Counted from the stretch's first letter, positions 545 through 39,966 are shown. The stretch is DNA of 49,207 bases from Octopus bimaculoides (GCF_001194135.2 NC_068991.1:7544748-7593954), one strand, 5' to 3'. Translations and numbers: made by a program. Notes: generated by a model not told the origin, from the sequence alone.

Positions 545-577
545 CGTGCATACATCTACTTGCATATATACATACAT

Positions 578-628
<51 letters not shown>

Positions 629-655
629 CATATATATATATATACATATATGTAT

Positions 656-718
<63 letters not shown>

Positions 719-777
719 CATATACATACATTTGATACAAATACATAAATAAATGTTTATATATAGTGTGCATGTTT

Positions 778-815
<38 letters not shown>

Positions 816-1150
816 ACGTATGTGTGTGTGTGCACGTATGTGTGTGTGTGCACGTATGTATGTGTGTGTATGTATACATATATACATAGAAAATGCATTA
901 TGTATGTATATGTATGTGTACATATATATATGTATGTATATATATGTAGATATATATATTTATATATATATATATATATATCTAATATATATTATATATA
1001 TATACATATATTATAAATATACATACATAATATATGAATATATATATATATATATTTATACACATACATACACATACATACACATATACACATCTATACT
1101 GATGCATTCACACATACACATCTATACTGATACATTCACACATACATAAC
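545..1150. repeat. Compound (TA)n/(CA)n/(TG)n microsatellite block, representative of many in the window
   Basis: Directly visible dinucleotide repeats; they explain the low-complexity ORFs in the track. Confidence 0.97.
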
Positions 1151-1401
1151 AATGATCGTCTACAGTATATTTATTTATCAGTGGGTTGTCGATTAGTAAA
1201 CTGCAAGCTGGATTATAATTTTTTTTTTTTTTATTTGGTTTCTAAAAGTGAAATTGAGAAAAGAAAAAAAATATATATATATAAAATAAAGAAACAAACA
1301 AAAGAATGTCAATCAGTAAAAAAAATATCTTTGAAGGATAAATAAACATATATATAAATATATCTATATATATATANNNNNNNNNNNNNNNNATATATAT
1401 G

Positions 1402-1439
<38 letters not shown>

Positions 1440-3977: not shown

Positions 3978-4005
<28 letters not shown>

Positions 4006-4009
<4 letters not shown>

Positions 4010-4600
4010 AGCTATGGACACACAAGAGGTGCAGTGGAATAATAGGAAGATTAGAGAAAGTAATTTTCATATGTCGAAGATGCACAGGAGCCATAAAAAC
4101 TACAGTTACTCAAGAATTTGATTTTCTCAAATGCCCTGGAGGCGCTTTAGAGGTAGTGGACAATTTCTGCTACCTAGGGGACCAAATTAGTTGTAGGGGA
4201 GTATGTATGGAGAGTGTAATGGCTAAAATAAGAATAGAATGGAGGAAATTCAGAGAGCTTTTACCTCTGTTGGCAACCGAAAGTTTCTCTCTCTGAATGA
4301 AAGGAAGATTTTATGATGCATGTATGCAAACAGCAATTCTACATGGTAGTGAGACATGGACCCTGAATGCAGGGACATACGAAGGCTTTAGAGGAATGAG
4401 ACTAGAATTTTCCACATGGTGTGTGATGTTAGTGTACATGTGCAATAGAATGCTAGTGTAGTGAGAGAGAAGTTAGGCATAAGGATATAAGAGGAATTAG
4501 ATGCAGTGTGCAAGAGATAAGACTGCACTGGTTTGGTAATGTGATGCAGGTGGATGCTGACAGCTCCATAAAGAAATGTCAACCTCTAAAAGTGGATGTC
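4006..4600 (+). mobile_element. Non-LTR retrotransposon (RTE-like LINE) C-terminal fragment with stops and frameshifts
   Basis: CKLWTHKRCSGI..CRRCTG..VVDNFCYLGDQI..IRIEWRKFRELLPLL..KGRFYDACMQTAILHGSETW..LHWFGNVM. Confidence 0.85.
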
Positions 4601-5283
4601 ACTTGCACTGGAAACATTCCCAAAGACCATCGCATTTTGGGAGAACTTGTTTTCACATGTGGAACATTACATGGATTGTAGGCAAGCCACATGTTGATCT
4701 GGGTGTTATGCAACTGGTCCTGACAGAAGTTCTTTTCATTTGAGAAGAACTAGATCATCCCTTGCTCAGCAGGATGCCTCGTCTTGTTCACAAGCTTCTT
4801 TGCTTTCCTCAAGCAGTTCTCTTTGTCCATTGCACTTCTTCTACAAATGATAATGAAGGTCTTCATTCAGGGTCAGTTCCATGGTGATGATTCCAACACT
4901 CATCTCTTTCAGCAGAGCCCAGATTCCCTTGCTTGGATCTTCCATCACCTTGTCCTGCAGTGAATTCCAGTATGTGGATACAAGTTAGAATGCCTGCTGT
5001 GTCTCTTCCTGCTGGCCATGTCTTTGATGGCTCCGTTGCAGCAATCCATGTCACGCCTTACAGTGGTGATGTTTGCATTCTGATACCTGGTGTGAATCCT
5101 CAAGATACAGCTAAATCTTCTCCAATATTCAGAAGGCTTCCAGTCCTCCATGCCAACTAAAATTTTCTCAACTACAACTTTAATCTTTATGCTCCCCAAT
5201 GCCATCGACTGTCCACCAATTGAATCAAGCTGTTCCTGAAAAAAAGGCGACATCAAAAATCGTCAAATTTAGCCCAAACACCT
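4596..5283 (-). mobile_element. Tc1/mariner (maT/DD37D-like) transposase fossil, 5' portion
   Basis: ENCLRKAKKLVNKTRHPAEQGMI*FFSNEKNFCQDQLHNTQINMWLAYNP..MVFGNVSS resembles the WFFSDEKxF first catalytic motif. The left end is TA-GGTGTTTGGG-like. Confidence 0.75.
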
Positions 5284-5662
5284 AAACACACACACATGCA
5301 CATCATTAGTAAATCATAAATCTAAAAGTATATTCTAAGTTATAGACCAGCCATTAGAGTCTGATGAGACGTGTGTAAAGCTAAACACTTTATGGATGTG
5401 AAACCCTATGAACCAGCAATAACTAACATTCTCTAAATATATATATATTCTTTTATTCTTTTACTTGTTTCAGTCATTTGACTGTGGCCATGCTGGTGCC
5501 CTGCCTTTAGTTGAGCAAATCAACCCCAGGACTTATTCTTTGTAAGCCTAGTACTTATTCTATCGGTCACATTTGCCAAACCGCTAAGTTACGGGGACGT
5601 AAACACACCAGCATCAGTTGTCAAGCGATGTTGGGGGGACAAACACAGACACACAAACATAT

Positions 5663-5708
<46 letters not shown>

Positions 5709-6779
5709 GGCTTCTTTCAGTTTCTGTCTACCAAATCCACTCACAAGGCTTTTGGTCGACCCGAGGCTCTATATATATATATATACAAACACACGCACAC
5801 ATATAACAATACATAAACACACATATATGTGTGTACACACATATGCACACACACACACACATCAGCAGCCACAGGATCATTTAATGTCCCTTTTCCATAC
5901 TGGCATGGATTGGACAGTTCAACAGGAACATGATGAAGCAAAAAGACTGTACCAAGCTTCATAGTCTGTTTTGACATGGCCTCTACAGCTAGATGCTCTT
6001 CTAAATGTCAACCTCTGTACAGAAAGTACTGAGTACTTTTTACACTGCACCAACATCAGTGAAGTTACCAGGTAACTGGCAAACCCAGACAAGGTTGTTG
6101 TACTGAGAGGGAAGTGGGTTTGTGCCAAGTGATGACAGGTAAAACAATGATACAGGAACAAGAGTGTTGCAGTACGAGAGATACATGGTTAGTTCAGGTG
6201 GAAAAGAGAAATGGTGATGAAGATGTATCTGAGAGCATAACTCAAATTACAGGAAAGTAATTATAACAGAAGTGGTACAGAGGATCGAATGTGTGTGTAT
6301 GTGTGTGTGTGAGAGAGAGAGAGAGAGATTGTGTGTGTATTTTTAGATCATTGATCAATATATCAGAAATTCCTGATTATGGCATATAACTACTCAGAAT
6401 GATTCACTTGGATTATTGCATTTAGAAATACTGATGACTCTTCAGACATAGCTTCTGTTATGCTGAAGTATACATAGACCTTGGCAGGCTCATGCTGATA
6501 AAAACAGCCAAAATGAAACAGTGAAAAATTATAACGTTTTTCTAGAAGAAAAGAGCAGTAGCTTCTTTTGGATGGATGTTTTCCATGGTTGACCTGTGTC
6601 AGTTGTGTGTGTACACATGTATGTTGTGTTCTCTGTCATGCATAGCAGGTTGGCACTGTCGTATTCTATTAGTCCTGGATGTTGTCAAATGACTGACTAT
6701 GGAAGCATCTAGAGTGGCACACCAACAGAAGGCTGCATCAATTAAGGGATCTTGATTATGATGATGATACATGTATAAA

Positions 6780-7035
6780 GTAAAGGTAGTTACCTTCGCG
6801 AGTCATGCTGACTCTTAAGGGCTGGCTTCCCAGTTGCCATGGCATATAAATTCCCTACCTGGACAGGACGCCAGTCTGTCACAGGATTTCTCATTTTTGC
6901 CAGCTGAATGGACAGGAGCAAAGTAAAATGAAGTGTTTTGCTTAAGAACACAACACACTGCCTGGTCCAGGAATTGAAACCACAATCTTATGATCATGAA
7001 TCTAACACTTTAATCGCTAAGCCACACACTTTCAC
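6780..7035 (-). mobile_element. tRNA-derived SINE, degenerate
   Basis: Reverse-strand tRNA-like head (GGCTTAGCGATTAAAGTG..GGTTTCAATTCC) followed by GTGTTGTGTTCTTAAGCAAAACACTT. Confidence 0.6.
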
Positions 7036-7099
7036 ATGATACATGTATGTTGCTGCCTCGTTCAGAAATGGGCATAACTACATTGCCAAGATGATTTTG

Positions 7100-7290
7100 A
7101 ATGTTCTACAAAGAAGAAGTTATGTCATCCTACAACAAAGGCATGGCACACATACAGAAATATGTTGGAGCAATAGTGGATCCTTTTAAAGCGAGGCTTA
7201 ATAATAAAAAATCCTCATTTAGAATCAAAGAGAGGTGCAATGTTGCATTAGACAATTATATTTGGCAATCAGAAAATCTTCAATGAAAAG
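7100..7290 (+). mobile_element. Degenerate Penelope-like GIY-YIG endonuclease fragment
   Basis: QKYVGAIVDPFKARLNNKKSSFRIKERCNVALDNYIWQSE resembles the PLE motif YIG.t...FK.R..nHkssF....t.Ls.yiW.lk. Confidence 0.6.
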
Positions 7291-8054
7291 TTTTGCCTTG
7301 CTTCAAACAAACATTCAAAATCTGAACATTTTCATGGACTAAACATAATTATGCATGAAGAAGCACTTTTCACAAATACATCTATAGACTGTCACCAAAA
7401 AATAAGCACAGGAGAGGCTGTGTGGTAAGAAGCTTGCTTCCCAACCACGTGGTTCCGGGTTCTTTTACTACAGCCTTGGGGCGACCAAAGCCTTGTGAGT
7501 GGATTTGGTAGATGGAAACTGAAAGAAGCCTGTCATATGTCTGTGTGTGTGTGTGTATCAGTTTGTCCCCCCACCATTGCTTGACAATTGATGCATGGCT
7601 GCAGTCAAATGACTGAAACAAGTAAAAGAATAAAAGAATAATCTGCTGGGAGCTCAGTTGCTGGATTCTGTGGATTTTTGTAATAAGAAACACTGCCAGG
7701 ATGTTGACAGACTGGAAGGGACCACTGCTCGAAACTTTGATGAGAATGAAATGATATTCTGTGATATACATGTGGAACATTCTCAAATGTCTTGCTCTAG
7801 ATTTTGGTATCCAATAGAAAGTGAACAAATAGGATAGGAGATATTGTCAGTTCCAGCATCTTTTACCTCAAATTCTTTCATCAGGAAACTACAGAGCAAC
7901 ATCTTGGCATTAAAAGACATACAATTAGATAAATGCCTTTTAAAACACAGCAAGAGATATTTGTAAGTAAAATTTCAATATATATATATACTATATAACA
8001 ATATGATACAAGTGGACAATGTCTGTAGGGGATATGGGTATATGAGATATTCCT

Positions 8055-8420
8055 TTACTCTTTTACTTGTTTCAGTCATTTGATTGCGGCCATGCTGGGG
8101 CACCACCTTTAGTCAAGCAATTCGACCCCAGGACTTATTCTTTGTAAGCCTAGTACTTATTCTATCGGTCTCTTTTGCCGAACCGCTACGTTATGGGGAC
8201 GTAAACACACCAGCATCGGTTGTCAAGTGATGTTGGGGAGACAAACACAGACACAAACATATATATACATATACATATATATACATATACATATATACGA
8301 TGGGCTTCTTTCAGTCGGCCCGAGGCTATAGCAGAAGAGACTTGCCCAATGTGCCACGCAGTGGGAATGAATCCAGGACCATGTGGTTGGTAAGCAAGGT
8401 ACTTACCACACAGCCACTCC
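8055..8420 (-). mobile_element. SINE copy (same family as 28558-28975)
   Basis: Reverse complement of the family head and tail. Confidence 0.85.
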
Positions 8421-8879
8421 TGCATCTGGGAAAGTTTTCCTATTTTGTGTACATGCATAATGATCAACAAGTAAGATATGGGTTTTATTTGTGGAGTTGT
8501 GACTTATTTTGGTGATATTTATGATAAGACGACTAATCTGAATTTGCAAATATAAGGAAACGAAACTGCAGTCTGTGTGATATTTCTATTCTTATTAATC
8601 ATATTTACATGTAATCATAATTATTTCTGTTTTATTCAGTTAAATAAAAATCTAGCTTGATAACTAAAATAATAAAACTTCTTACATCCATATTAAATTC
8701 AATTATACAGCCACTCTCTTTCATTATAGCGTAAGGGCAAAATTTCGAGGAGCATTCAAGTGTTTTAGCTGTGTGTATGTTGGGGATGGGTGACTTGCGA
8801 AAAAATACGGGAAGCATTGTATTAGATCTTAATAATAACGTTTCATTTTGTTTAGTAGCAGAATTATTTTGTAGATGCA

Positions 8880-9240
8880 ACACACTCAAAATGCACAACA
8901 GTTGCAACGTATTTGATTATATCTAAAAATATCCCCAAACAAGCTGGCCGCAGTACGGTATCTTGCTAAAACAATTCCCCCGCAGCCGCAGGAAAAATTG
9001 ATATCAATTACAGTTATAATCAGAAGTCGCTAGATTTTATACTAAGTCTATGATTTGCAATGTGTCAATTGCAGAGAATCATTATCTCACTTCGCTGCTT
9101 TTACCTATCGACTTGCCTGAAGTGGACTATTTTTTATGCTGAAACTATTTTAAGATTCACCGTGTAAACACGCATGCGTAATAATCGTTCAAAACAAACA
9201 AAAACCGGGAAGTTTAATGTATTTTTTAATTTCCTCCGAT
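8880..9240. promoter_or_regulatory. Candidate CpG-retaining promoter for SLX4 (possibly bidirectional)
   Basis: Local CpG enrichment in non-repeat DNA against a CpG-depleted background. Palindrome ACGCATGCGT (NRF1-like) at 9170-9179 and CGGGAAGT (ETS/E2F-like) at 9206-9213. Confidence 0.45.
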
Positions 9241-9959
9241 TATGTTTTTTTATTAATATCATCTTTTTTTAAAAACATATCTCAACTGAAGATCTTATCT
9301 AGATCCGAATAGCAAGCATAATGTACCAGTATATTGATATCAGAAAGAATAACAGACCAGTATATTCCTATCACAAACAGAGATCAAGAGGAAAACTCCT
9401 TCTTTGACGTATGCATTTCCTTATCGTTATTAACATTCTAAGTAATTGTACTTCAATACAATCAGTACAATTTAAGTAATCGTCATGTTCAGGAATTAGC
9501 GATTTCTGGCCACCGACAGTTGCTTTTATCGAATGTGATATCTAAAAACAAATTAAACAAAACAAAAACAAAAAAAAACTACCAAGGATTTCATTCAATT
9601 GTAAGTTAACTCCTTTTATTCTGAATGTAAGGTTATGTCCGTTAGGAATGTTTTTACAAACAATAAATTCATTAGAGAAAAGTGACTAATGATGTTTATG
9701 GTTAAATGGTTATTGTGCAACCCCGTTCGTCCTTGTTTCACTTTATATACAGGATTTTCAGTTCATACGATAACCACGTGCATAAATTTCACAGAAACAT
9801 TCAAGATTTCTTATCATTTGTCTAAGGCCGTTCTCTCAATGTTTTCAACCCAAATAATGATTAGACGCATAAAAATAAATATATTTTATTTGCATCTGCT
9901 TTTACGTTGTCATCCTACACATTATGACAAACCCAAACAGCAAACAACCTCTTCTGGGT

Positions 9960-10125
9960 GTCTACATTCTTGATAAAATTCGGGATCAAGATGTTAACAT
10001 GGGTCCTCTTCTTTCTACTTGGTGGTTGGAGTTTTTGGCTAATCATCGAAATGTATCTTTGTTGTGTCTTTTCCATAAGTATTTTCATGGTCATTGCTCT
10101 AATGAACCTTCTATTCCCCTTTTTA
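9960..10125 (+). mobile_element. CR1/Jockey-group LINE RT C-terminal fossil
   Basis: LDKIRDQDVNMGPLLS..LANHRNVSLLCLFHKYFHGHCSNE resembles the LshRRnVasLsLfYkY..g.CS.EL motif. Confidence 0.6.
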
Positions 10126-11759
10126 TACCTGCTGCTACGCTCCAGCAGGCTGCCCAGCAAGTTGTCACGTGACACTGTCTAAATTTCCCGCTGCTAGGGT
10201 CCAGTAGGCAGCCTGAGCAGATTGTCACATGACACTGTTGATATTCTGTTCTTTGAGCTTTCTTTTGAATTTGTAGGCCTCTTCTTTTCCCTCTTACAGT
10301 GGCCTCAAGCCTTGTTTGGGACAAAATCGTATTAAAAAGCAAAACAAAGCAATTTCAAAAATCTTTTGAGATTATTGCAAGATGACACTAGAGCAGAGAA
10401 CAAAGCAGTGTTAGGAAATTAAAATTAATTGCAGAGCTTTGATTAAAGAAGCTATTGCAGTATGCTCAAAAGAAGGAACTCTAGAATATGAATTTATCGA
10501 AAGTACTTGGAAACAGGTGAAGGTTGGTGACAGGAAAGGCATCCAGTCGTAGAAACTGGTTCAACAAATACTGTCCAACCTTTGCAAGTATGGAAGAGTG
10601 GATACTAAAATGATGATGATAATGATGTAAGATATTGTTATTTCATACAGTATGTACACAGCACAACAAGATCCAGGTATATAGTAAAAAAGGGAAACTC
10701 TTCATTTTCAGAAATCTTGAAATTTCTCAAGAGGAAGGATTAGTGGATGATGTATGAATAATGACAGCATTAGGTAAAGATCATTTCAAATGTAAAACTT
10801 CCAGAATGAAGAGATAAAATAATGTTTTATCTCTGCAACAAAGGTCTTTTTCTTTTTAAGCATTGTTCTGAAAATCTGTTCAAGTAAAGAAAGTACCACT
10901 AGACCTCAACGTAAACACAAACATCCAGTTGATTCTAAAACTATTTCATACTTCATGCAAAAATTTATATAAAAAAAAATTATTATTGAATCAATTAATA
11001 CCAAGAAACTAAAAAGTAAGTCATGCATGCTAACATAAGGATTACGTATAAACAAAATGAAGAATTAGCATTCAGAACAGCTTCACTTCAGACAATATGA
11101 AACTCAGAAGTTTGTGGTGCTTCTTTGTTTCCAGTGTCTTATGAAAATGGAAGTAGCCCTGTGAATAGGAGATGTTATCCAGGTCAAAAGGTGAATTCAA
11201 ATGATTTAATAGATCTACTCTCTTTAAGTAATTATTCTTACAAACTCTCGTTAACTTTCCTCTGTGACACTGACGCCACTGATTTAAGCCTTTAGCATTT
11301 AACCCAGCCATATCTGGCCCTAATATGCCACCCATTTTATGTTCTAACCAGCCAGATCCAGCCTATCACACCTACCATTCAATGCCATTATAGAATATTA
11401 GCAGAAAGACTGCCCTCCAGGCGCATATTCTTTTGGACACTCCATGTTGAATTGCAAAATTCTAATGTGATATTTGTGTAATAAAGAAATCAAACCAGAA
11501 ATGCCATTAGAACAGCAAAAGTATTGGGAAAGTTACTGTTTGTTGATAAACTTTTTTGCTTTTTAAATGCAATTTACCCAATATTTCTGCTGTTCCTTGT
11601 GGCATTTCTGCGTTCGAAAATAAATTATCATTTTATTTGTATCTTACACACGTTTTGATGCTTATAAAAAGAAAAAATGTTAGTTTGTTTATATATGTAT
11701 ATAAACACGTAGTTGTGCTTTTAGCTTTATAGCATCTAAATTTGCAGATTAATTTGTTC

Positions 11760-11832
11760 GGAGGCAGTTTAGCTTAATGATATAGCACTCAGCCAGTCAT
11801 TGAGGGATGTGGATTTGAGTCTCATGGCTGTT
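11760..11832 (+). pseudogene. tRNA-like remnant (SINE head or tRNA pseudogene)
   Basis: GGAGGCAGTTTAGCTTAATGATATAGCAC..GGATTTGAGTCTC has degenerate A and B boxes but no intact cloverleaf. Confidence 0.4.
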
Positions 11833-12138
11833 TGTTGACAAATTTTTCCATTTATAAAGAGTAATTTACCCAATATTTCTGCTGTTCTAACAGCAAGTTT
11901 GCATTTGAAAGTAAATTATCGTCTTTATTTGTATCTTACAATACACATTTCGACGCTTATAAAAAAAAAACAAATGTAAGTTTGTTTAAATTTATGAATA
12001 TGTAGTTTTTTGTTCAGTTTTTTTTTTTTTCTGAATTTCTTTTTCCCTTATTTAAAAAATTTTAATGACATCTTGCTTTTATTCATTTTTTTTTTTTTTT
12101 CTTGCAGCTCCTTTTTTTCATTTCTTTTCATTTTAACC

Positions 12139-15100
12139 ATGGTTGGAGTGAGAAGAACACCTAAATCAAGTAAGAAAATCACTAAAGAAACAAAAGAAGT
12201 AACTCCCCCCAAAAAATTATGTAAAGATACGGAAAACGAGAAACAAACTGAATGTTTGTTTTTAAAACCTGAGGTGAATTTTAATGATTCCATTGATTTT
12301 AAAACTCCTGAGAGGAAAATTGGTACAGGCAGATCTAGACTCCGTAACCAAATTGATTATGTGAGACTTAACGATCCTCACAAAAAGGAGTATTCTTTAA
12401 TTAGAAAAAACACAAAACAAAATATATCAACAAACACTTCCCTCGAATCTGTAAGTGTAACTCATTCAGAAAGTTCCAAGAAACGTGCAAGAAAATCTTC
12501 CCAAACCAAAAATGAAGATTCACATTTGCAAAATGTTACACCATCTCCGAAACCTGAAAAAATTCATTTATCTCAGCCCAAATCTGTTAAATCTTCAAGT
12601 AAGCAACTTAAGGAGACCAAAAACAAAGTAAATTCTAAATCAAAGACCCCTGATTTTGATAAGAAGTTTCTTGAAGAAAAATCTTTATGTAATACCCTGA
12701 ATCAACAAATTCCCAAGTCTAGATTGCCAAAAAATCAAAATTTGTCTGAATTGGTTCAAAGTTCAGATAATAACGCTTCTTTTTCTGGCCTCACAATCTA
12801 CAAAAGTCCTTCTGACCCCTTGGAAATTGTGAAAAAAGGAAACTCTTCTTTCACTTCAGGTGAGCAGTCTGAAATATCTAATAGCTGTGGGACTTACTTA
12901 CGAAATAGGAGAAAAATTAGTTATAAATTCAATATCAAAGAATCCAGAAAATATGTTCCTGCTGTTACATCTTCACATGTCCCTTCTATTACATCTTCTC
13001 ATGTCTCCTCTGTTACATCTTCACATGTCCCCACCGAAACATCTTCATATGTCTCTGCTGTTACATCTTTATATGTCCCCATTGGAACATCTTCAAATGT
13101 CCCCTCTGCTACATTTTCATATGTCCCCTCTGTTACATCTTCTCATGTTTCCTCTGTTACATCTTCACATGTCTCCACTGAAGCATCTTCACATGTCCCC
13201 TCTGTTACATCCTCACATGTCCTTTCTGTTACATCTTCACATGACCCCTCTGTTACATCTTCACATGACCCCTCTGTTACATCTTCCCGTATCCCTTCTG
13301 TTACGTCTTCACATGTACCCTCTGTTGCATCTTCACATGTTCCATCTTTACATGTCTCCAATGGGACCTCTTCACATGTCTTTTCTCTTACATCTTCACA
13401 TGTCCCCACCGAAGCAGATTCACACTTTTCTACAGCTACATCTCCCCTTGTTTATGCTATTACATCTCCAATTGCTTCCACAGAAACAGGATTTGACCAT
13501 CAACAAAATAAACTGGAATTAGACAATGATTTTACTGAAGTACAAATGAAGATTTGTCCTGCATGCGAAGATGATTTTCCCCTTCTATTATTTGAAGAGC
13601 ATGTACTACAATGTCTTAAGGAACAATTTCAGTCATCCAGCCACAAGCCATTTGACAATAAAACAAAACACAGCCAAATATCCCAAGATGAAATATTAGC
13701 CCAAAAGTTGCATGAAGAACTGAATGAAAATGCCTTGACAACTAATGACTCTCTAGAATCTGACAAAATTATGTGTTGTATATGTAAAACAGATTTGACC
13801 TGCTTGAATTCATTACACAGAACTCAGCATATCAACACATGTATTGACCAAACAGAAAATACAAAAGCTCCCCCTGACACTGTAACAGAATCCGTAGTCA
13901 TTTGTCCTATGTGTGGGCTGCAATTTAAGTCTTTTTCTTTAAGAGAGCTGCATTTCAAAAGCTGTGGAAGGGATAAATTTATTGCACCTGGACAGCATAT
14001 TGTTACTAATGTCCATGGTGAACCCAGCAGATTGACCACAAACAAAAGGCAGTCAAAGAATAGAAAAACATCCAAGTCTAAAAAAGCTCCTGATGATCAA
14101 CTTGAGTTAGCGCTAGCCATGTCTAATTCTCTTCAAGAAGAACAAAACAAACAGGAAGAACAATTAAGCCGGTGTATCCAGAATATAAAAAAAGAAGTTT
14201 TGAAAGAGTTAAAAAATCAGAAAAACAAACAACTTCCATTGTTAGTTAGATTATCAGATGAAGAGCGCCAAGAATGCAATGCAGAAAAAGTTGCTAATAT
14301 TATGAACGAAAATTTTGAAAATGTTTCCTTAAGTAAACGACATAAACATAGTTCCTTAGCTCCAACAGAACCTACCAATCTATGGTTAAAATCTTCACTA
14401 ACTCAGGCAGATTCTTCAAAACTTCCATTCTATGTGAATTCATTGATGCCCCCCATTGAAATGGATGTTGTAAGTGTAGAAAATCGATTGAAATGTTTAT
14501 CGAGAAACACTGAAAGTGTTATTAATCAAAATACAACTGATTCTGCTGATAAAGAAAATGATCAGCAACCAGTAGCACCAAGCCAAACTGCTCTCATCTT
14601 AGCTGAGCTGGCAGGTGACAATGAACCTGCTAATGATTCTATGCACACACCTGTCGAAGATGAGTCACCAAATGTTCAAAAAGAAATGAATGAAGAGTGT
14701 TCAACAGGTTTACTAACATCTTTAAGTTCAGACTTCTGTCAATTAGTCAACAACTCTAGTTTTAGTGATGTTCAGTTTATGACAGCTGATGGAACTAAAA
14801 TTTTTGGGCATAAAATAATTCTTCAAATCAGATGTCCCAATATTTTAAACAGAATCTCTACTCATCTTGAGACACCCATTGTTCATCTGAGCGAAATATC
14901 TCATGATCTGTTAATAGTGTTTCTGAAGTATATTTATGCTGGGCAGTTAAATATAGATGAAACTCAAGCACACAACTTAAAGATGCTCTCCCAGGAGTTT
15001 GAAATGCCTGAATTATTTCATGCCTGTGAGAAAATGTTAAAAACCAGTGTAAATCATAACCAACAAAGTTCAGGTTTTTATCCATCTCCTTTAAAAACAG

Positions 15101-18100
15101 TTGATGATATGATTGATTATTTACTTGAAAGCTCAGATGAAGATGTTGAAAACAGAAATATTTGTCCAGAAAATCCAAGCTGTGATTATAAAATATTAGA
15201 TATAGAGAAACAACCTCAAGATTCTCAGAATGATAACCAGTCTACTGTAACAAGAGATTCTGCCGAATTTCAAAATTCCACAAATACCTCTCCAAATGTT
15301 ATCTCACCTTCTTCGAAAGTTTTGGGAAATTCATTAAATGGATATTCTGGTGATAATGGAAGCAATTTGGATTATTTGTCAAATGTGCCTGTCTCTTCTG
15401 AACTTGGAACATCTGCTCAGTTACCTGAAATAAACTGTGACAATCAGCCAAACAAACCACAATCTAATTACAATATTGATCATTTATCCACTGATAAAAC
15501 TGACAACCCTTGTGATACTGTGATGACACTGCAAAAGTCTCCATCAGACTTAACATCCTCACAGAATACACCTCATTCACCAGAGACTGATAAAGGTTTT
15601 GAGTTAAATAAAAATGTGCTCCCGTCATTCACATCCACTTTGCCTGTTTCTACTAATTTAACTGATAACAGCAATAATAATTCTGAGAATAAAGAGCAAT
15701 GCCAATTAGATAATGCTGAGTTAATTAAAGATTTTTCTCCAATTCCTTTTGAGGATGAATCTTTTAACAATTCTCTTGAGACTAAATCTTATTGTGATGA
15801 TATCACAACACCTGAAAAGGACAACATTCATTACAACAGGGAAAACGTATTAAGTTTAAGTGATGATCTGTCGAATATGTCCAAAGAATTATTTAGTGAT
15901 CATGAGCTAGAAACTGTAGAAAACAACAAAACCAGTATCCAGAATAGTTTTGATAACCAACAAGAGTTCACATCATCTCATCAAATAGTGGAAAATATAT
16001 CTCCTTGCCACAAAGAAAATAAACCAGACATTTCAAACTATAACTTTTCTAGTCATGAAAATGTCTTCTTAATTAAAGACAGTGACGAAATAAATAATAG
16101 TCCAAATGTAGATAATACTGTTGCAGATGATCCAGTTTGTAGAATTATTTATACATCTCAGTCTTTGGCATCTAATGATGGATCAAACAAAGAACTTACT
16201 GTTCCTCTGTCTCTTTCTACAGAGACTAATTGTAATTTAGGAGAGAAATTTTGTTTTCTAAATTCTTCTGCTCCAGTTTTTCCGAAAACACAAGAAGTGA
16301 AGGACATAAATAAAAACCTGAATGAAGATCAACCAGAGACGTTTTCTCAAAACCAAAATAGAAAAAGGAAACAAAGTTCTCTGTCTTCTTCACCATTAAA
16401 TAGGAAGAAAACTAAGAAAGAACTTGAAACGGAAGAGAACAGTCATTTGACTTTATATAATAGAAGTTCTCCAATTTTAAATTCAGACAATTCAAAGTTA
16501 GAAACAAGCAAAGAGGAGCCGTTTTCACCAATCAACTCATTAAATTCGTCTGTTAATTTATGTAATGACAATGGCAGCAATAAAGTGTACACAGTAAATT
16601 CTGAAACAAGTATTACTATAGTTGTTAATGACAGCTATGAAAATACACATCAGTATAAAAATGAGAGTGATCTTGATATAAGTAAGGAGACATATAGTGA
16701 CATTTCTGAGATAAATAATCTGCAAATAAGCCCCAAACAACCTAATGATACTGAGTCAAATAGGGAATCCATTGAAAGTGCATCTCCTGAAAAGAATTCA
16801 AATTATGAAAATGATAGAGAAATATATGAAGAAAGTTTTACTGCTGATGATATGAATGAAACAACTTATGGAAAAGCCCACTTTAGTGTATTAAATAGTT
16901 TTATCCAGGATAATCCTGACTTGTATAAAAAAATACTCGAGTATGAGCCACTTGATTTTGATGTTTTGAAGAAAAGGCTTGGAGAATCTAAAATAAAATG
17001 TTCAAATAAGAAGCTACTTGAATATCTTGAGAATCAGTGTATAACATTTATTTTGAACAAAGATAAACGAAGTAGAAAATCTTGCTCACCACAGAAAAGA
17101 AAAACAGTTAAGGAAAAACTTAACACAGAGGCAAGTAGTAATTTAGAAACAATGGCAAAGGTGGAGGAATTATCAGAGAAATGTTCTTTAAATTCATCTT
17201 TTAATAACATTTCTGATGATTTATATAATTATGAAGACGGGAAAACTAAACAGTTTGACGATGATGTTACAAATGAAGAAGAAAGAGCAGATTTAAAGAA
17301 ACTTTCCCCAAATGTCTCAAATGATTTCTGTTCCGCCAAAGAATACCAAATGGAAACATCTGAAAAACCGAAGAAGAAATTTGTATTCAAAAAGATTACA
17401 GCAAAATCCTCGATTTGCAGTTCAGCAGGAAACAAAACTGTGGATACTGGAACTTCTGACTGCCTTGTGAAATCGTTTACTGAACCATCAGCTTCTGATA
17501 AAAAAATTACAAACAATGAAAACCTTCAGTTAAATCATAATGCCACCAATGACGTCTGGGAACACTTTTGTGATGATTCTCTGGTAGCATTCTCCCCAAT
17601 ACCTTCACATTCCAGAGTCAATTTGGACTCCAGTAAAGATAAACTAGATTTATCTCCTGTAGCTGAACAAAATCTTGCTCACTCTTCATCACATGATTGT
17701 TCTTACACAAGTATTATAGAAGATGTAAAACAGATGTCCTGTCTGGGATCTGAATTAAATTGTTCTTTATCTGATTCATTTGAAAATATTGATCTGAAAC
17801 CTAATCCTAATGCTAAATTTGAAACTCCAGCAAATGTTAACCATCAAACAAACTGTGGTGAAAAAGAGCAAAGTATTCTATCGCCCTTTACTCCAATGCC
17901 AGATTATGATAAAATGTCCACACCAGGCCTAAAAAAAGAGATGAAGAAATACGGGTGCAAAGCAAGACCTAAGAAAAATATGATCAAAGTTCTTAAAGAC
18001 ATCTTTATCAGAACTCATCAGTATAAAAGCGATAGCGAACAAGACACAAGTATGGACACAAATAATGAAATTTCTGAGACAAACAGATTCCAAATAAGCT

Positions 18101-18516
18101 CTCCAGAACCCAAGAATCCTCAGACAGATAAAGAATCAGCTGAGAGTATATCTCCTATAAATATTTCAAGTTTTGAAAATGATGGAGTGGTGATATATGA
18201 AGAAAATTATATTGCTAACGAGACAGAAGAAGTAACGAGTAGTCAACAGACGAATGGAGAAATACTTTTTAGTAAAGTAAATGATTTTATCCAGACTAAT
18301 CCTGACTTCTATAGAAAAGTACTTATGTATGAACCTCTTGATTTTGATGTTTTGAAGAAAACTCTTGAAGAGTCCAATATAAAATGTCCTGCTAATAAAC
18401 TGTTGGAATATCTTGATAACCAGTGTATAACGTTTGCTCTGAGTAAAGATAAACAATCTAAGAGGAAACCACACAGGGGGGGCACTGGCAGACCAAGAAA
18501 AGGAAAGAAAGTGTGA
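12139..18516 (+). CDS. SLX4: Structure-specific endonuclease scaffold SLX4 (FANCP/BTBD12)-like, ~2125 aa, single coding exon
   Basis: 6.4-kb ORF with no stop. ATG at 12139 in strong context (aaccATGG), 31 nt after a poly-T/CAG acceptor (AG at 12106-12107). Domain order matches SLX4: UBZ4-like fingers (CCIC..HINTC 13774-13842; CPMC..HFKSC 13903-13965), MLR-like DDQLELALAMS (~14092), BTB (SDFCQLVNNSSFSDVQF..GHKIILQIRCP, ~14725-15036), SAP (PMPDYDKMSTPGLKKEMKKYG, 17893-18021), C-terminal SLX1-binding domain (YRKVLMYEPLDF..LDNQCITF, 18280-18435). An upstream coding exon cannot be excluded. Confidence 0.93.
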   Translation: MVGVRRTPKSSKKITKETKEVTPPKKLCKDTENEKQTECLFLKPEVNFNDSIDFKTPERKIGTGRSRLRNQIDYVRLNDPHKKEYSLIRKNTKQNISTNTSLESVSVTHSESSKKRARKSSQTKNEDSHLQNVTPSPKPEKIHLSQPKSVKSSSKQLKETKNKVNSKSKTPDFDKKFLEEKSLCNTLNQQIPKSRLPKNQNLSELVQSSDNNASFSGLTIYKSPSDPLEIVKKGNSSFTSGEQSEISNSCGTYLRNRRKISYKFNIKESRKYVPAVTSSHVPSITSSHVSSVTSSHVPTETSSYVSAVTSLYVPIGTSSNVPSATFSYVPSVTSSHVSSVTSSHVSTEASSHVPSVTSSHVLSVTSSHDPSVTSSHDPSVTSSRIPSVTSSHVPSVASSHVPSLHVSNGTSSHVFSLTSSHVPTEADSHFSTATSPLVYAITSPIASTETGFDHQQNKLELDNDFTEVQMKICPACEDDFPLLLFEEHVLQCLKEQFQSSSHKPFDNKTKHSQISQDEILAQKLHEELNENALTTNDSLESDKIMCCICKTDLTCLNSLHRTQHINTCIDQTENTKAPPDTVTESVVICPMCGLQFKSFSLRELHFKSCGRDKFIAPGQHIVTNVHGEPSRLTTNKRQSKNRKTSKSKKAPDDQLELALAMSNSLQEEQNKQEEQLSRCIQNIKKEVLKELKNQKNKQLPLLVRLSDEERQECNAEKVANIMNENFENVSLSKRHKHSSLAPTEPTNLWLKSSLTQADSSKLPFYVNSLMPPIEMDVVSVENRLKCLSRNTESVINQNTTDSADKENDQQPVAPSQTALILAELAGDNEPANDSMHTPVEDESPNVQKEMNEECSTGLLTSLSSDFCQLVNNSSFSDVQFMTADGTKIFGHKIILQIRCPNILNRISTHLETPIVHLSEISHDLLIVFLKYIYAGQLNIDETQAHNLKMLSQEFEMPELFHACEKMLKTSVNHNQQSSGFYPSPLKTVDDMIDYLLESSDEDVENRNICPENPSCDYKILDIEKQPQDSQNDNQSTVTRDSAEFQNSTNTSPNVISPSSKVLGNSLNGYSGDNGSNLDYLSNVPVSSELGTSAQLPEINCDNQPNKPQSNYNIDHLSTDKTDNPCDTVMTLQKSPSDLTSSQNTPHSPETDKGFELNKNVLPSFTSTLPVSTNLTDNSNNNSENKEQCQLDNAELIKDFSPIPFEDESFNNSLETKSYCDDITTPEKDNIHYNRENVLSLSDDLSNMSKELFSDHELETVENNKTSIQNSFDNQQEFTSSHQIVENISPCHKENKPDISNYNFSSHENVFLIKDSDEINNSPNVDNTVADDPVCRIIYTSQSLASNDGSNKELTVPLSLSTETNCNLGEKFCFLNSSAPVFPKTQEVKDINKNLNEDQPETFSQNQNRKRKQSSLSSSPLNRKKTKKELETEENSHLTLYNRSSPILNSDNSKLETSKEEPFSPINSLNSSVNLCNDNGSNKVYTVNSETSITIVVNDSYENTHQYKNESDLDISKETYSDISEINNLQISPKQPNDTESNRESIESASPEKNSNYENDREIYEESFTADDMNETTYGKAHFSVLNSFIQDNPDLYKKILEYEPLDFDVLKKRLGESKIKCSNKKLLEYLENQCITFILNKDKRSRKSCSPQKRKTVKEKLNTEASSNLETMAKVEELSEKCSLNSSFNNISDDLYNYEDGKTKQFDDDVTNEEERADLKKLSPNVSNDFCSAKEYQMETSEKPKKKFVFKKITAKSSICSSAGNKTVDTGTSDCLVKSFTEPSASDKKITNNENLQLNHNATNDVWEHFCDDSLVAFSPIPSHSRVNLDSSKDKLDLSPVAEQNLAHSSSHDCSYTSIIEDVKQMSCLGSELNCSLSDSFENIDLKPNPNAKFETPANVNHQTNCGEKEQSILSPFTPMPDYDKMSTPGLKKEMKKYGCKARPKKNMIKVLKDIFIRTHQYKSDSEQDTSMDTNNEISETNRFQISSPEPKNPQTDKESAESISPINISSFENDGVVIYEENYIANETEEVTSSQQTNGEILFSKVNDFIQTNPDFYRKVLMYEPLDFDVLKKTLEESNIKCPANKLLEYLDNQCITFALSKDKQSKRKPHRGGTGRPRKGKKV

Positions 18517-26702: not shown

Positions 26703-29685
26703 ACACACACACACACACACAGAGTAATTTACCTGAATAATATCTGGTTGGGCAAAACTTGTTATTTGTTTTTTTACTATTAGCTTTAGTTCATCTTGAA
26801 TTTCTTCAGCATTTTCAGTTATGTCATCTTTGAGAACTACAAATGCATGGATGCCTGGAATTTAAGATTACAAAAAAAGAAACAAAATAATTATTGTAAA
26901 ACTCGAAAGAATATTTTGAAAAACATGCATATTTATGAAAAAGCATGACTTTATTGCTATAATTAAATCAAATATACACCTTTTTTCTTTTTGTTTTCAT
27001 TTGTTTTTACATCCATTTTTCCATTGTAGCATGGGTTAGATGAATATATGATTGAGGAGCTGTTTTACAACTGGATGTTATTCCTGTCACTAATAATCCT
27101 TCTCTGTGTTTCTGGATTTTTTTATTTCAACATGTCTTTAAGGGCATGAGGTGAGCAGATAGTTTGTTGATAACAAACAACAACAATAATGCTGCTCATA
27201 GCAACTTTCACAGAGTACAGATGTAAACAAACACACACACACACTCACAGATGATGACCTTTTGGTTTCATCTTTTGGTCTCCTACCTGGCCAGCTCCTG
27301 TCGAAGAACTATCCAACCCATGCCAGCAGGGAAGGCGGACATTAAACAATGATGATGATGATATATGAGTCTAGGACAATAGCCCCCCCCCCCACAAGGA
27401 CAATTACCCCTGAGGACAACAGATGATGATTTAAATCTTCTTAATATATTAGAGAGGGGGTAATTGTCCTAGGGGTAGTTGTCTTCGGAAGGAATTGTCC
27501 TATGGTGGGGTAATTGTCCTGATACGATATATATATATATCTGCCAGCCCCGGTCAAACCATCCAGCCTGTGCCAGCATGGACAACAGACGTCAAATGAT
27601 GGTGATGATGCCTATGCGTGTGTATCTTTGTGTTTGTCTCCTTCACCACTTGACAACTGATGCTGGTTTGTTTACATCTATGTAACTTAGCAGTTCAGCA
27701 AGAGAGACTGATAGAACAAGTACCGAACTTAAAAGAAAAGAAATAATAAATGTAAGTGCTAGGGTTGATGTTTTTTTTTTCAACTAAAACCCTTCAAGGT
27801 GGTGCCCCAGCATGGTCACAGTTCAATGACTGAAACAAGTAAAAAATAAAACTACAACAATATCAACTTATGAATAATATCACATACCTTCTCCCTTGAT
27901 ATCATGTGGGAAACTAACCACTGCAGATTCTGCTACAGCACAGTGGTTGGCCTTCAAAGAAAAAAGAAATTCTATAAAGATGGTTAATAATTTTTTTAGA
28001 AAATTGAAATTTGATATTTCATCTCACTTTTGTGGTAAAACTGGCACTCAGTCAGTAAAAACAAGCATTCCAGTTGATCAGATCAATGGAACAGCCTACT
28101 TGGGGAAATAATGTGTAAGTGACTGAGTGCTCCACAGATATAGTTCTCAGGGATATTCAGTGTGACACACACAAAATGACAATAAATCAAGTGGAGTAGG
28201 CACTCAAGCCTGTTTTGCCAGTACCAGCCTTTATGAGCAAGGTTGCTAAGACCAAGTAACTTGCAAGACAGAAATACATATATTGAACGAAATAGTAATA
28301 GACCAAGAAATCTCACTATGGCATCCTCGATCTCAGCTGTACCAAGCCGGTGGCCACTGACATTGATGACATCATCGACTCTCCCGGTAATACGATAAAA
28401 GCCGTGTTCATATCGTATAGCATTGTCTCCAGAGAAATATAAACCTACAGATGAAAAAAAAATATAACATATATAAAGTAATAAATAACAATAAAATTTT
28501 TTTAAATGCTTGAAAATATATTCTTTGAAAAGACATTTAAAAAAAATCTTTTTTATAGGCGTAGGAGTGGCTGTGTGGTAAGTAGCTTGCTTACAAACCA
28601 CATGGTTCCGGGTTCAGTCCCACTGCGTGACATCTTGGGCAAGTGTCTTCTACTATAGCCTCGGGCCAGCCAAAGCCTTGTGAGTGGATTTGGTAGATGG
28701 AAACTGAAAGAAGCTCATCGTATATATTTATATATATATATGTTTGTGCGTGTATATATGTTTATGTGTCTGTGTTTGTCCGCCAACATCACTTGATAAC
28801 CGATGCTGGTGTGTTTATGTCCCTGTAACTTAGCGGTCCAGCAAAAAGAGACCGATAGAATAAGTACTAGGCTTACAAACAATAAGTCCTGGGATCGATT
28901 TGCTTGACTAAAGGCGGTGCTCCAGCATGGCCACAGTCAAAAATGACTGAAACAAGTAAAAGAGTAAAAGAGTAAAGTGTTATTAGTTTTAGATTTTCAC
29001 AAATGATTGCTCCCCTTCAATAAAATGTCTTCTATGGTATTTCATTCTTGAATTTGTTTTGCAAGAATCTCAGCATGAAATCATGTGCTGAAACTGATAT
29101 CGTTGTACTTTGGGAGGATCATTTGGTGAATAAACACACCTGTTGGTTATAGTCCATGTCAGTTTTATTTTCTTTCTTGAATTTTATTATATTTTCTTAT
29201 GACCACTTATGTATTTGGTGTGGTGTTTGGGCTGTGACGAGCTATGTGTTGTGGTGGAGAGGGGTGAGGCAAACAGAGGTGAAGCCAGACCGGAAGGGCC
29301 AAACCGGAAGGGTCAGATCGGAAGTCGGCGACACGCGGTCGAAGGCTAGCACGTGGGGCCAGTGAGAAAACAGCGACGTTACGAGAAAGACGTGTTCTGA
29401 TTAGGAGCGATCGTGTACCCCGCTGCGGTCGGCAAGGTAAGGTCCAACGCTTCATTCTGTCCTTTTGCTTCTTGTTGTCTTCTTCCTCCATCGCACCACA
29501 TTTGGAAATCATTGAAAAGGTCATAGAAAAATGCTATAATATCTACAATGTGTGTGTGTGTCTGGGTTCAATTTTATCATTAACTAATCAGTTAATTAAT
29601 TAGTTAATTATTGATTAGTTTGATGTAAATTTTGTCACTTTACTGTAGCTTTTATAGACACTCACACTCACACACACATATACAT

Positions 29686-29728
<43 letters not shown>

Positions 29729-34673: not shown

Positions 34674-34716
<43 letters not shown>

Positions 34717-36316: not shown

Positions 36317-36348
<32 letters not shown>

Positions 36349-39919: not shown

Positions 39920-39966
<47 letters not shown>

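What the first reader, a model, noticed from the sequence alone, without database searches (positions are those of the whole stretch)
16620..18460. SLX4 carries two SLX1-binding domains (internal duplication of the C-terminal module)
Seen: a second SBD/CCD at 16894-17049 (NSFIQDNPDLYKKILEYEPLDFDVLKKRLGESKIKCSNKKLLEYLENQCITF) is 39/52 (75%) identical to the terminal one at 18280-18435. The duplicated block extends ~90 aa upstream (THQYKNESD..ISEINNLQIS vs THQYKSDSE..ISETNRFQIS). It also reaches into the last SAP helix (ATAGTTGTTAATGACAGCTAT vs AAAGTTCTTAAAGACATCTTT). In copy 1 the linker and SAP remnant have drifted far more than the SBD, which suggests selection kept the extra SBD. Established: the SLX4 proteins I know have a single C-terminal SBD that binds and activates the SLX1 GIY-YIG nuclease, and a SAP/MBR region that binds MUS81-EME1. 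Inference: this scaffold could load two SLX1 molecules, one on each side of the MUS81 site. That could allow MUS81-independent double nicking of Holliday junctions, or binding of a second or diverged partner.
Basis: partly seen in the sequence, partly recalled or inferred. Interest (0 to 1): 0.8.

Follow-up and report, generated by a model that had tools for sequence, protein, structure and literature searches.

The report
Octopus SLX4 with two SLX1-binding domains
The DNA-repair scaffold gene SLX4 of octopuses carries a second, internal copy of the small domain that normally docks the SLX1 nuclease; the extra copy is real, found so far only in octopods, and kept by selection, but whether it binds a second SLX1 is untested.

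Summary
Window 12139-18516 (+) is one uninterrupted 2125-codon ORF, the SLX4 orthologue of Octopus bimaculoides. It holds two Pfam Slx4/CCD domains. Each passes the curated cut-off alone (57.3 and 61.4 bits; cut-off 24.8). They are 39/52 aa identical, against at most 12/52 by chance.

The duplicated block is larger than reported. It is the whole SAP-linker-CCD-tail module, about 16519-17109 versus 17884-18513. In the internal copy the SAP half has decayed and the CCD is intact.

Both domains occur in O. sinensis, O. vulgaris, an unnamed octopod and Argonauta hians, at the same position. Cuttlefish, a second decapodiform-like relative, gastropods, bivalves and vertebrates have one. Of 205 CCD-bearing proteins gathered here, only the four octopod proteins held at that point have two.

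Between two Octopus-lineage species the internal CCD has pN/pS 0.18 (p = 1e-4). Its predicted fold matches solved Slx4 CCDs. In Octopus it keeps the mapped SLX1-contact residues. In Argonauta it has lost two of them.

The two Octopus modules look partly homogenised after the split from Argonauta.

A second SLX1 docking site is the best reading, but it is inferred. MUS81-independent double nicking is speculation. This is a new variant of a known scaffold, of moderate interest.

The parts
12139..18516 (+). SLX4 (BTBD12/FANCP) coding sequence, 2125 codons plus stop, with no intron and no stop codon inside
   Evidence: ORF list. Pfam Slx4 x2 plus BTB. 83% identical to O. sinensis SLX4 XP_036363086 and 39% to the Argonauta hians orthologue.
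12962..13353 (+). 24-nt tandem repeat, about 16 copies, encoding the (V/P)TSSHVPS serine-rich array in the N-terminal part of SLX4
   Evidence: Tandem Repeats Finder. pN/pS is near 0.9 here.
14740..15048 (+). BTB domain (aa 868-970), the dimerisation domain of animal SLX4
   Evidence: Pfam PF00651, 45.1 bits, cut-off 20.5.
16519..16644 (+). Decayed SAP remnant of the internal module (aa 1461-1502). Only PFSP and nucleotide similarity to the second half of SAP (16576-16637) remain.
   Evidence: PF[ST]P occurs only at aa 1461 and 1916, 42/43 residues before THQYK. Nucleotide score 17 vs null 9.9 +/- 1.4. No significant similarity at the amino-acid level. The MUS81-contact residues are absent.
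16645..16872 (+). Linker 1 (THQYKNES...), paralogue of linker 2
   Evidence: 44% aa and 70% nt identity to linker 2. Orthologue pN/pS 0.47.
16873..17085 (+). SBD1 / internal Slx4 CCD (Pfam core 16888-17049, aa 1584-1637)
   Evidence: Pfam 57.3 bits alone. Six-frame HMM hit. AF2 five-helix model, pLDDT 76. The top 9 PDB fold matches are all Slx4 CCD chains. pN/pS 0.18, p = 1e-4.
17086..17109 (+). Basic tail after SBD1 (SPQKRKT...) and the 3' junction of the internal module, which is shared with Argonauta
   Evidence: The self-BLASTP hit runs to aa 1657 vs 2125. The CS[PT].K[RK]K junction aligns in Octopus and Argonauta and is absent in cuttlefish.
17884..18012 (+). Intact SAP domain (aa 1916-1958) with Y1923, L1931, E1934 and M1935 at the positions of the mouse MUS81-contact residues
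   Evidence: Aligned by motif with Argonauta, cuttlefish, Haliotis, squirrel, turkey and fish SLX4. Residue roles are from PMC3808987. pN/pS 0.12.
18013..18258 (+). Linker 2 (THQYKSDS...)
   Evidence: pN/pS 0.38.
18259..18468 (+). SBD2 / terminal Slx4 CCD (Pfam core 18268-18435, aa 2044-2099)
   Evidence: Pfam 61.4 bits alone. AF2 pLDDT 78. The top 9 PDB fold matches are Slx4 CCD chains. pN/pS 0.12.
18469..18513 (+). C-terminal basic tail
   Evidence: Translation.

Best explanation
Early in octopod evolution, the conserved C-terminal SAP-linker-CCD module of SLX4 was copied within the gene. The copy was inserted about 460 codons upstream of the original. This happened before the Octopus/Argonauta split and after, or apart from, the lineage leading to cuttlefish. 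In the internal copy the SAP half, which is the MUS81/DNA-binding part, decayed. The CCD, which is the SLX1-binding domain, was kept as a folded domain under purifying selection. In the Octopus lineage the two modules were later partly homogenised, most likely by gene conversion. The most likely function of the internal CCD in Octopus is a second docking site for the SLX1 GIY-YIG nuclease on each SLX4 chain. It lies N-terminal to the single MUS81 site. It would raise the local SLX1 dose or stability, or offer an alternative geometry for SLX1 relative to MUS81-EME1 and XPF-ERCC1. Shown: the duplication, its taxonomic range, purifying selection, retention of the mapped contact residues in Octopus, and a CCD-like predicted fold. 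Inferred: SLX1 binding, simultaneous occupancy, and any change in cleavage mechanism.
For: Two PF09494 domains, each above the cut-off alone. A 450-600 nt paralogous block. Both domains are present in O. sinensis (all 3 isoforms), O. vulgaris, a Logan octopod and Argonauta. They sit at the same site with a shared 3' junction. A single CCD is found in cuttlefish (P0022, 90% identical to the Acanthosepion pharaonis BTBD12 model over 48% of its length) and in a second relative. This holds in six-frame translation of whole contigs. An exhaustive profile search of 1.84 billion representatives found no non-octopod with two real hits among the best 150. Only the four octopod proteins held have two among 205 CCD proteins. 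SBD1 shows 9 nonsynonymous and 11 synonymous changes, pN/pS 0.18, Fisher p = 1e-4. The whole gene gives 0.44 and linker 1 gives 0.47. AF2 models of both copies have Slx4 CCD chains from Slx1-Slx4 crystal structures as their top 9 hits (SBD1: 4xlg_B TM 0.81, rmsd 1.4 A). The Cys whose C-to-R change abolishes SLX1 binding in mouse (PMC3808987) is kept in all copies. The L-x-Y that aligns to yeast Y703/F705, which contacts the Slx1 RING (PMC8287910; alignment), is kept in every Octopus copy. Paralogue dS is 0.56 (0.39-0.85) against Octopus-Argonauta orthologue dS of 1.19 (0.92-1.55). This points to later homogenisation.
Against: No binding data exist and no complex model could be run here. Octopus SLX1 was not retrieved. 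In Argonauta the internal CCD reads ILSNES and QCIAY where other animals have L-x-YEP and QCITF. Two near-invariant contact positions are therefore changed, and its dN against Octopus is higher than for SBD2 (0.33 vs 0.23). This fits relaxed or altered function at least there. The internal CCD has no intact SAP beside it, and in yeast SAP-CCD packing is needed for efficient, accurate cutting. The selection test rests on one species pair and 65 codons. The gene-conversion inference rests on noisy dS values, and quartet site patterns are inconclusive.
Confidence: 0.6

Rival explanations
1. The internal CCD is retained but no longer works as a canonical SLX1 dock. It may have been recruited for another role: binding a different RING or GIY-YIG-type partner, packing against the SAP domain, or competing with SBD2 as an intramolecular regulator.
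For: Argonauta SBD1 has lost the aromatic and the proline of the YEP motif and changed TF to AY, yet still scores 49 bits in Pfam and keeps an open frame. SBD1 carries substitutions fixed across Octopus species (RLGES, SNKK, I for V) that differ from SBD2 and from the cuttlefish CCD. Yeast CCD has a second surface that packs on SAP.
Against: In the four Octopus-lineage sequences (O. bimaculoides, O. sinensis, O. vulgaris, Logan octopod) every mapped SLX1-contact position is intact. The domain evolves as slowly as SBD2 there (pN/pS 0.18 vs 0.12, not different, p = 0.71).
Confidence: 0.25
2. Octopus and Argonauta acquired their internal CCDs by two independent duplications, not by one old duplication followed by gene conversion.
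For: An NJ tree groups Octopus SBD1 with Octopus SBD2 (77% bootstrap) to the exclusion of both Argonauta copies. Octopus paralogue dS is below Octopus-Argonauta orthologue dS. The Octopus linkers are still alignable, and the Argonauta linkers are not.
Against: The insertion position is the same, the CS[PT].K[RK]K junction is shared, and the flanks are colinear on both sides. Copy-1-specific states are shared by Octopus and Argonauta: I21, R66, K69, and KNES/NNES after THQY. Two hits at the same site are improbable.
Confidence: 0.08
3. The internal copy is a neutral relic on its way to decay and has no function.
For: The SAP half of the same module has decayed beyond recognition. Linker 1 evolves at roughly the gene-wide rate.
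Against: pN/pS is 0.18 with p = 1e-4 against neutrality. The domain remains above the Pfam cut-off in five octopod genomes, including Argonauta at 39% overall protein identity. The decay is differential: the SAP is lost and the CCD is kept.
Confidence: 0.05
4. The duplication is an assembly or annotation artefact.
For: The window comes from a gap-rich assembly with 13 N runs.
Against: There is no gap within the gene. The copies differ at 19-30% of nucleotides, so they cannot be a mis-collapsed or duplicated read pile. The same structure is seen in independent assemblies of five octopod taxa and on two Logan contigs.
Confidence: 0.01

Closest known systems
Animal SLX4 (BTBD12 / FANCP; MUS312 in Drosophila, HIM-18 in C. 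elegans)
   Same: Same gene: the order is zinc-finger region, BTB, long disordered stretch, SAP, linker beginning THQ, and C-terminal CCD. The SAP residues needed for MUS81 binding and the CCD cysteine needed for SLX1 binding are conserved.
   Different: All described SLX4 proteins have one SAP and one CCD; this is stated as the ubiquitous architecture in PMC8599992 and PMC8287910. Octopod SLX4 has an extra CCD about 270 residues N-terminal to the SAP. The cephalopod coding sequence is also a single uninterrupted ORF.
Fungal Slx4 CCD in Slx1-Slx4 crystal structures (4XLG, 4ZDT, 6SEH/6SEI, 7CQ2-7CQ4)
   Same: Both octopus copies are predicted to adopt the same five-helix fold (TM up to 0.81, rmsd 1.4-3 A). 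Both keep a hydrophobic or aromatic pair at the helix-2 end and a small residue at the end of the last helix.
   Different: Sequence identity is only 12-24%. In fungi the CCD sits about a dozen residues after SAP and packs on it when DNA is bound. The internal octopus CCD has no functional SAP next to it.
Cuttlefish SLX4 (P0022/P0180; Acanthosepion pharaonis BTBD12 CAE1323364)
   Same: The closest single-CCD relative. It shares the KKFTFK motif, SAP, THQYETDS and CCD, and is about 31% identical over UBZ-BTB and the C-terminal region.
   Different: It has no internal CCD anywhere on the 7-kb contig in six frames. The octopod insertion has no counterpart in the alignment.

Membership tests
SLX4 orthologue (whole gene) | BTB/POZ domain in mid-protein | tested here: met
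   PF00651, 45.1 bits, cut-off 20.5, aa 868-970.
SLX4 orthologue (whole gene) | SAP region with the MUS81-contact residues (mouse Y1340, L1348, E1351, L1352) | tested here: met
   PMPDY...GLKKEM aligns by motif with squirrel, turkey, fish, Haliotis and cuttlefish SLX4. Y, L and E are kept and L is replaced by M. Residue roles are from PMC3808987. Pfam SAP itself gave no hit.
SLX4 orthologue (whole gene) | C-terminal CCD/SBD (PF09494) | tested here: met
   aa 2044-2099, 61.4 bits alone.
SLX4 orthologue (whole gene) | UBZ4 zinc fingers and the MLR (XPF-binding) region | not tested
   Cys/His motifs are visible by eye at about aa 478-640. This region has pN/pS 0.35 and aligns to cuttlefish and gastropod SLX4. 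No model was run on it.
SLX4 orthologue (whole gene) | Physical scaffold for SLX1, MUS81-EME1 and XPF-ERCC1 | not testable with these tools
   Needs biochemistry.
Slx4 CCD / SLX1-binding domain (internal copy, SBD1) | Matches PF09494 above the gathering score on its own | tested here: met
   57.3 bits (O. bimaculoides), 56.2 (O. sinensis), 53.4 (Logan octopod) and 49.1 (Argonauta); cut-off 24.8.
Slx4 CCD / SLX1-binding domain (internal copy, SBD1) | Five-helix CCD fold | tested here: met
   AF2 model with pLDDT 76 and helices at 7-22, 24-31, 38-47, 54-63 and 71-74. Foldseek top 9 hits are Slx4 CCD chains with probability 0.96-1.00. Foldseek E-values are weak (0.03-0.3) because the domain is small.
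Slx4 CCD / SLX1-binding domain (internal copy, SBD1) | Conserved Cys at the end of the last helix (mouse C1536; C-to-R abolishes SLX1 binding) | tested here: met
   QCITF, QCVTF or QCIAY in all internal copies. Literature.
Slx4 CCD / SLX1-binding domain (internal copy, SBD1) | Hydrophobic/aromatic pair after helix 2 that contacts the SLX1 RING (yeast Y703/F705; C. glabrata Y679/F681) | tested here: inconclusive
   Met in the Octopus-lineage sequences (ILEYEP). Not met in Argonauta SBD1 (ILSNES). Alignment to 7cq3_B is; sequences are.
Slx4 CCD / SLX1-binding domain (internal copy, SBD1) | Position at the C-terminus, directly downstream of a SAP domain | tested here: not met
   SBD1 is internal (aa 1579-1649 of 2125). 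The SAP upstream of it has decayed. This concerns architecture and not the domain family itself.
Slx4 CCD / SLX1-binding domain (internal copy, SBD1) | Binds and activates SLX1 | not testable with these tools

The most novel reading that the evidence does not exclude
Octopod SLX4 loads two SLX1 nucleases per chain, which would be four per BTB dimer if octopus SLX4 dimerises as human SLX4 does, one on each side of the MUS81-EME1 site. This would give octopods a differently wired Holliday-junction and fork-processing machine. Alternatively, the internal CCD has been re-targeted to a new partner, which would make this a natural experiment in rewiring a nuclease scaffold.
Probability: 0.3. Interest if true: 0.65.

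Novelty: new variant of a known kind. Interest (0 to 1): 0.45.

Why it matters
SLX4 is the Fanconi-anaemia (FANCP) scaffold that controls three structure-specific nucleases. Reviews describe its SAP plus single CCD tail as invariant from yeast to human. A lineage in which selection has kept a second CCD for roughly 100 million years (this time estimate is from my own knowledge and was not tested) is a natural test of several questions. How does SLX1 dose, and its position relative to MUS81, affect junction resolution? Is SLX1 stability limited by CCD availability? The domain is small and easy to express, and pull-down tests would be simple. The finding also corrects public annotation. The orthologues are labelled 'uncharacterized protein', and the O. 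vulgaris model is fused to a stoned-B-like gene. The practical reach is limited. Lineage-specific domain duplications in disordered scaffolds are common, and no phenotype is known.

Tried and rejected
1. A word-indexed protein search with the C-terminal 211 aa returned nothing, not even the protein itself. That search was lost. A frame error wasted.
2. The DNA of O. sinensis SLX4 was not on record. dN/dS therefore rests on O. bimaculoides against one unnamed Logan octopod, plus the saturated comparison with Argonauta.
3. A sequence search of the CCD profile against PDB gave only E = 0.2-0.4 for fungal Slx4. The fold search was needed.
4. I tested whether the duplication was a 1.4-kb tandem unit. 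hhalign of the region upstream of copy 1 against the region between the copies gave one colinear 71-column match at P = 0.11, which is not significant. Tandem versus dispersed origin stays open.
5. Quartet site counts to choose between copy-wise and species-wise grouping were inconclusive: 3:1:0 for amino acids and 8:9:5 for nucleotides.
6. No amino-acid similarity between the copy-1 flank and SAP was detectable. A global nucleotide alignment of the first 20 codons was also not significant. The case for full-SAP duplication rests on the unique PF[ST]P pair and on the 61-nt similarity.
7. The SRA and ENA accessions of the Logan and ENA contigs were not found in any paper. The cuttlefish identity of P0022 was obtained from its 90% match to Acanthosepion pharaonis instead. 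The taxon of L004 remains unnamed.
9. The apparent second hits in other SLX4 proteins (for example P0048) score about 1 bit and fall on the SAP domain. They are not second CCDs.


Full report
**What is in the window**

Positions 12139-18516 (+) form one uninterrupted ORF of 2125 codons. Pfam finds a BTB domain at aa 868-970 and two stretches of the Slx4 family PF09494.

The protein matches itself on a contig of 80,868,371 bp. An Octopus bimaculoides RefSeq protein (XP_014778265) is recorded on a contig of the same length, so the window is almost certainly O. bimaculoides.

The closest relatives are:
- O. sinensis LOC115217132, called SLX4 by UniRef, at 83% identity
- an unnamed octopod assembled from SRA runs, at 78%
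- Argonauta hians, at 39%
- fish SLX4, more distantly

The gene has no assembly gap. The rest of the window has 13 N runs.

**Check of the observation**

- The two quoted 52-residue peptides are exactly as stated. They share 39/52 residues and 126/156 nucleotides.
- No other place in the protein exceeds 10/52, and shuffled proteins reach at most 12/52.
- A nucleotide alignment joins 16620-17068 with 17988-18454 (one search gives the 201-nt core at 78%).
- THQYK opens the linker in both copies.
- Scanned alone, the internal domain scores 57.3 bits and the terminal one 61.4 bits, against a curated cut-off of 24.8.

**The block is bigger than reported**

- Nucleotide similarity continues upstream to 16576 versus 17945. 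The score is 17, the null is 9.9 +/- 1.4, and 0 of 300 codon shuffles reach it. This covers the second half of the SAP domain.
- The motif PF[ST]P occurs only twice in the whole protein, at aa 1461 and 1916. These sites lie 42 and 43 residues before the two THQYK motifs.
- Downstream, the self-BLASTP hit runs to the last residue.
- The unit that was copied is therefore most likely the complete SAP-linker-CCD-basic-tail module, about 16519-17109 versus 17884-18513. Reviews call this the minimal Slx4 architecture (PMC8599992).
- In the internal copy the SAP part is no longer recognisable at the amino-acid level. It lacks the Y/L/E-L residues that mouse SLX4 needs for MUS81 binding.
- The downstream SAP keeps those residues: Y1923, L1931, E1934 and M1935 (PMC3808987).
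- The layout is therefore SBD1, then about 270 residues, then SAP, then about 85 residues, then SBD2.

**Taxonomic range**

- Two CCDs are present in O. sinensis (all three isoforms), O. vulgaris, the Logan octopod and Argonauta hians.
- In an alignment of the region, the internal CCD of Octopus and Argonauta sits at the same place. Both share a CS[PT].K[RK]K junction and have colinear flanks.
- The nearest non-octopod relative is P0022, at 31% identity to octopus. It is 90% identical to the Acanthosepion (Sepia) pharaonis BTBD12 model over 48% of its length, so it is a cuttlefish.
- That contig, and a second more distant relative (L004, 56% identical to P0022), each have a single CCD in six-frame translation of the whole contig.
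- An exhaustive HMMER search with a CCD profile against 1.84 billion representative proteins gave 552 hits. Among the best 150, only the octopus protein has two real stretches. The other '2-stretch' cases have a second hit of about 1 bit on the SAP domain.
- Named single-CCD hits include the gastropods Babylonia, Haliotis, Nucella, Aplysia and Candidula, and the bivalves Sinanodonta, Mya, Mercenaria, Mizuhopecten and Mytilus. They also include a sea star, a hemichordate and many vertebrates.
- Double CCDs are therefore not common in invertebrates. An artefact is excluded by five independent octopod assemblies and by the 19-30% nucleotide divergence between the copies.

**Selection**

I threaded codons onto a protein alignment of O. 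bimaculoides and the Logan octopod (dS 0.23). Nei-Gojobori proportions are:

| Region | pN/pS |
|---|---|
| Whole gene | 0.44 |
| Linker 1 | 0.47 |
| Linker 2 | 0.38 |
| SAP | 0.12 |
| SBD2 | 0.12 |
| SBD1 | 0.18 |

- One search gives distance-corrected dN/dS of 0.41 for the whole gene, 0.15 for SBD1 and 0.10 for SBD2.
- SBD1 has 9 nonsynonymous and 11 synonymous changes. The Fisher test against neutrality gives p = 1e-4.
- SBD1 and SBD2 do not differ (p = 0.71).
- The internal CCD is thus constrained like the recognised functional domains, while the SAP half of the same module decayed.
The sample is one species pair and 65 codons.

**Fold and contact residues**

- AlphaFold2 models of both copies are five-helix bundles, with pLDDT 76 and 78.
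- For each model, the nine best PDB matches are all Slx4 CCD chains from Slx1-Slx4 complexes: 7CQ2/3/4, 4XLG, 4ZDT and 6SEH/6SEI. For SBD1, 4xlg_B gives TM 0.81 and rmsd 1.4 A.
- The mouse C1536R change in the 'highly conserved Cys' abolishes SLX1 binding. This Cys maps to the end of the last CCD helix at the Slx1 interface.
- The corresponding QC(I/V)(T/A)(F/Y) motif is present in every octopod copy.
- Yeast Y703 and F705 contact the Slx1 RING. In C. glabrata, F681 inserts into a pocket on Slx1.
- In the HMMER alignment to 7cq3_B, these residues correspond to L-x-Y of the animal L-x-YEP motif.
- Every Octopus-lineage copy and Argonauta SBD2 keep the motif. Argonauta SBD1 reads ILSNES, and also has AY in place of TF.
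- The Octopus internal CCD therefore looks competent for SLX1. The Argonauta one may be weakened or re-purposed.

**History of the two copies**

- A neighbour-joining tree groups Octopus SBD1 with Octopus SBD2 at 77% bootstrap.
- Paralogue dS is 0.56 (0.39-0.85) in the window and 0.81 (0.51-1.25) in the Logan octopod. The Argonauta paralogues are saturated.
- Octopus-Argonauta orthologue dS is 1.19 (0.92-1.55).
- The shared insertion site and junction argue for one old duplication. The lower paralogue dS then suggests later homogenisation, probably gene conversion, in the Octopus lineage.
- That homogenisation would predate the O. bimaculoides/Logan-octopod split. This is inferred, because quartet site patterns are inconclusive.
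- Whether the original event was a 1.4-kb tandem duplication or a dispersed 0.6-kb copy is unresolved (hhalign P = 0.11).

**Mechanism**

- SLX1 is inactive, and in mouse cells unstable, without SLX4. The CCD binds between its nuclease and RING domains and displaces the inhibitory SLX1 homodimer.
- The best-supported reading is that Octopus SLX4 offers two such docks per chain.
- What that changes is unknown. Human SLX4 homodimerises through its BTB domain, and a BTB domain is present here. If octopus SLX4 dimerises too, two SLX1 per complex do not need a second CCD.
[quoted passage not shown] The internal CCD lacks an intact SAP.
- I therefore rate 'a second SLX1 dock' at about 0.6, a diverged or regulatory role at about 0.25, and 'MUS81-independent double nicking' as unsupported speculation.

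**Novelty**

- Full-text searches found no paper on SLX4 in octopus or cephalopods.
- The reviews and structural papers I read state that a single SAP-CCD tandem is universal.
- The sequences themselves are public but unremarked, with names such as 'uncharacterized protein' and 'stoned-B-like'.
- This is a new variant of a known scaffold. It is real, lineage-specific and selected, but it has no demonstrated functional consequence. I score interest at 0.45.

Noticed in passing
window 12139-18516; L003 3001-9438; L001 94-6738; L005 454-6669; L004 605-6867: The whole SLX4 coding sequence is one uninterrupted ORF in O. bimaculoides, the Logan octopod, Argonauta (a 2145-codon ORF) and cuttlefish. 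On the genomic-looking contig L004 it is colinear, with the ORF broken only into four adjacent called genes. Vertebrate SLX4 has many exons (from my own knowledge), so cephalopod SLX4 may be a retrogene replacement or have lost its introns.
   Followed up: partly
window 12962-13353: A 24-nt tandem repeat of about 16 copies encodes (V/P)TSSHVPS. Its pN/pS is about 0.9. The length differs between species, and the three O. sinensis isoforms differ by multiples of 16 aa. Argonauta has a degenerate Ser/Pro-rich version.
   Followed up: partly
window 28083-43554 (- strand); L003 10777-12438: Exons of an acetyl-CoA synthetase lie downstream on the minus strand (Pfam ACAS_N at 43207-43554 and AMP-binding at 38428-38775). 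The same neighbour in the same orientation is found in Argonauta, so microsynteny is conserved.
   Followed up: yes
L003 8845-9054: The Argonauta annotation removes 255 nt (85 codons of a Pro/Ser-rich insertion inside linker 2) as an intron, although the frame stays open through it. It may be an exitron or an annotation choice. Argonauta also has an 8-aa tandem repeat (N.NTSVCN) just before its SAP.
   Followed up: partly
P0214 (O. vulgaris CAI9730617.1), P0213 (O. bimaculoides XP_014778265): The O. vulgaris gene model fuses a stoned-B-like/MHD-domain gene with SLX4 (4293 aa). This pulls unrelated 'mucin-17' proteins into the same 90% cluster. The stoned-B-like gene is on the same chromosome in O. 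bimaculoides and O. sinensis; the fused O. vulgaris model hints that the two genes are adjacent. Public names for the octopod SLX4 orthologues are uninformative.
   Followed up: partly
window aa 1297-1375 vs 1815-1885 (about 16027-16263 vs 17581-17793): There is a faint colinear similarity between the region upstream of the internal module and the region between the two modules (hhalign, 25% identity over 71 columns, P = 0.11). If real, the original duplication unit was about 1.4 kb and tandem.
   Followed up: partly
window 1-12000 and 18600-49207: The flanks hold 13 N gaps and many TA/CA microsatellite tracts. These create long spurious ORFs of the 'YIYIYI' and 'HTHTHT' kind. None overlaps the SLX4 gene.
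   Followed up: no
window 17371-17394 (aa 1745-1752, KKKFVFKK): A short basic motif K(K/R)KF.FK(K/R) between the two modules is conserved in the four octopod sequences aligned here and in cuttlefish. It has no assigned function that I know of and could be a short linear interaction motif or an NLS.
   Followed up: no
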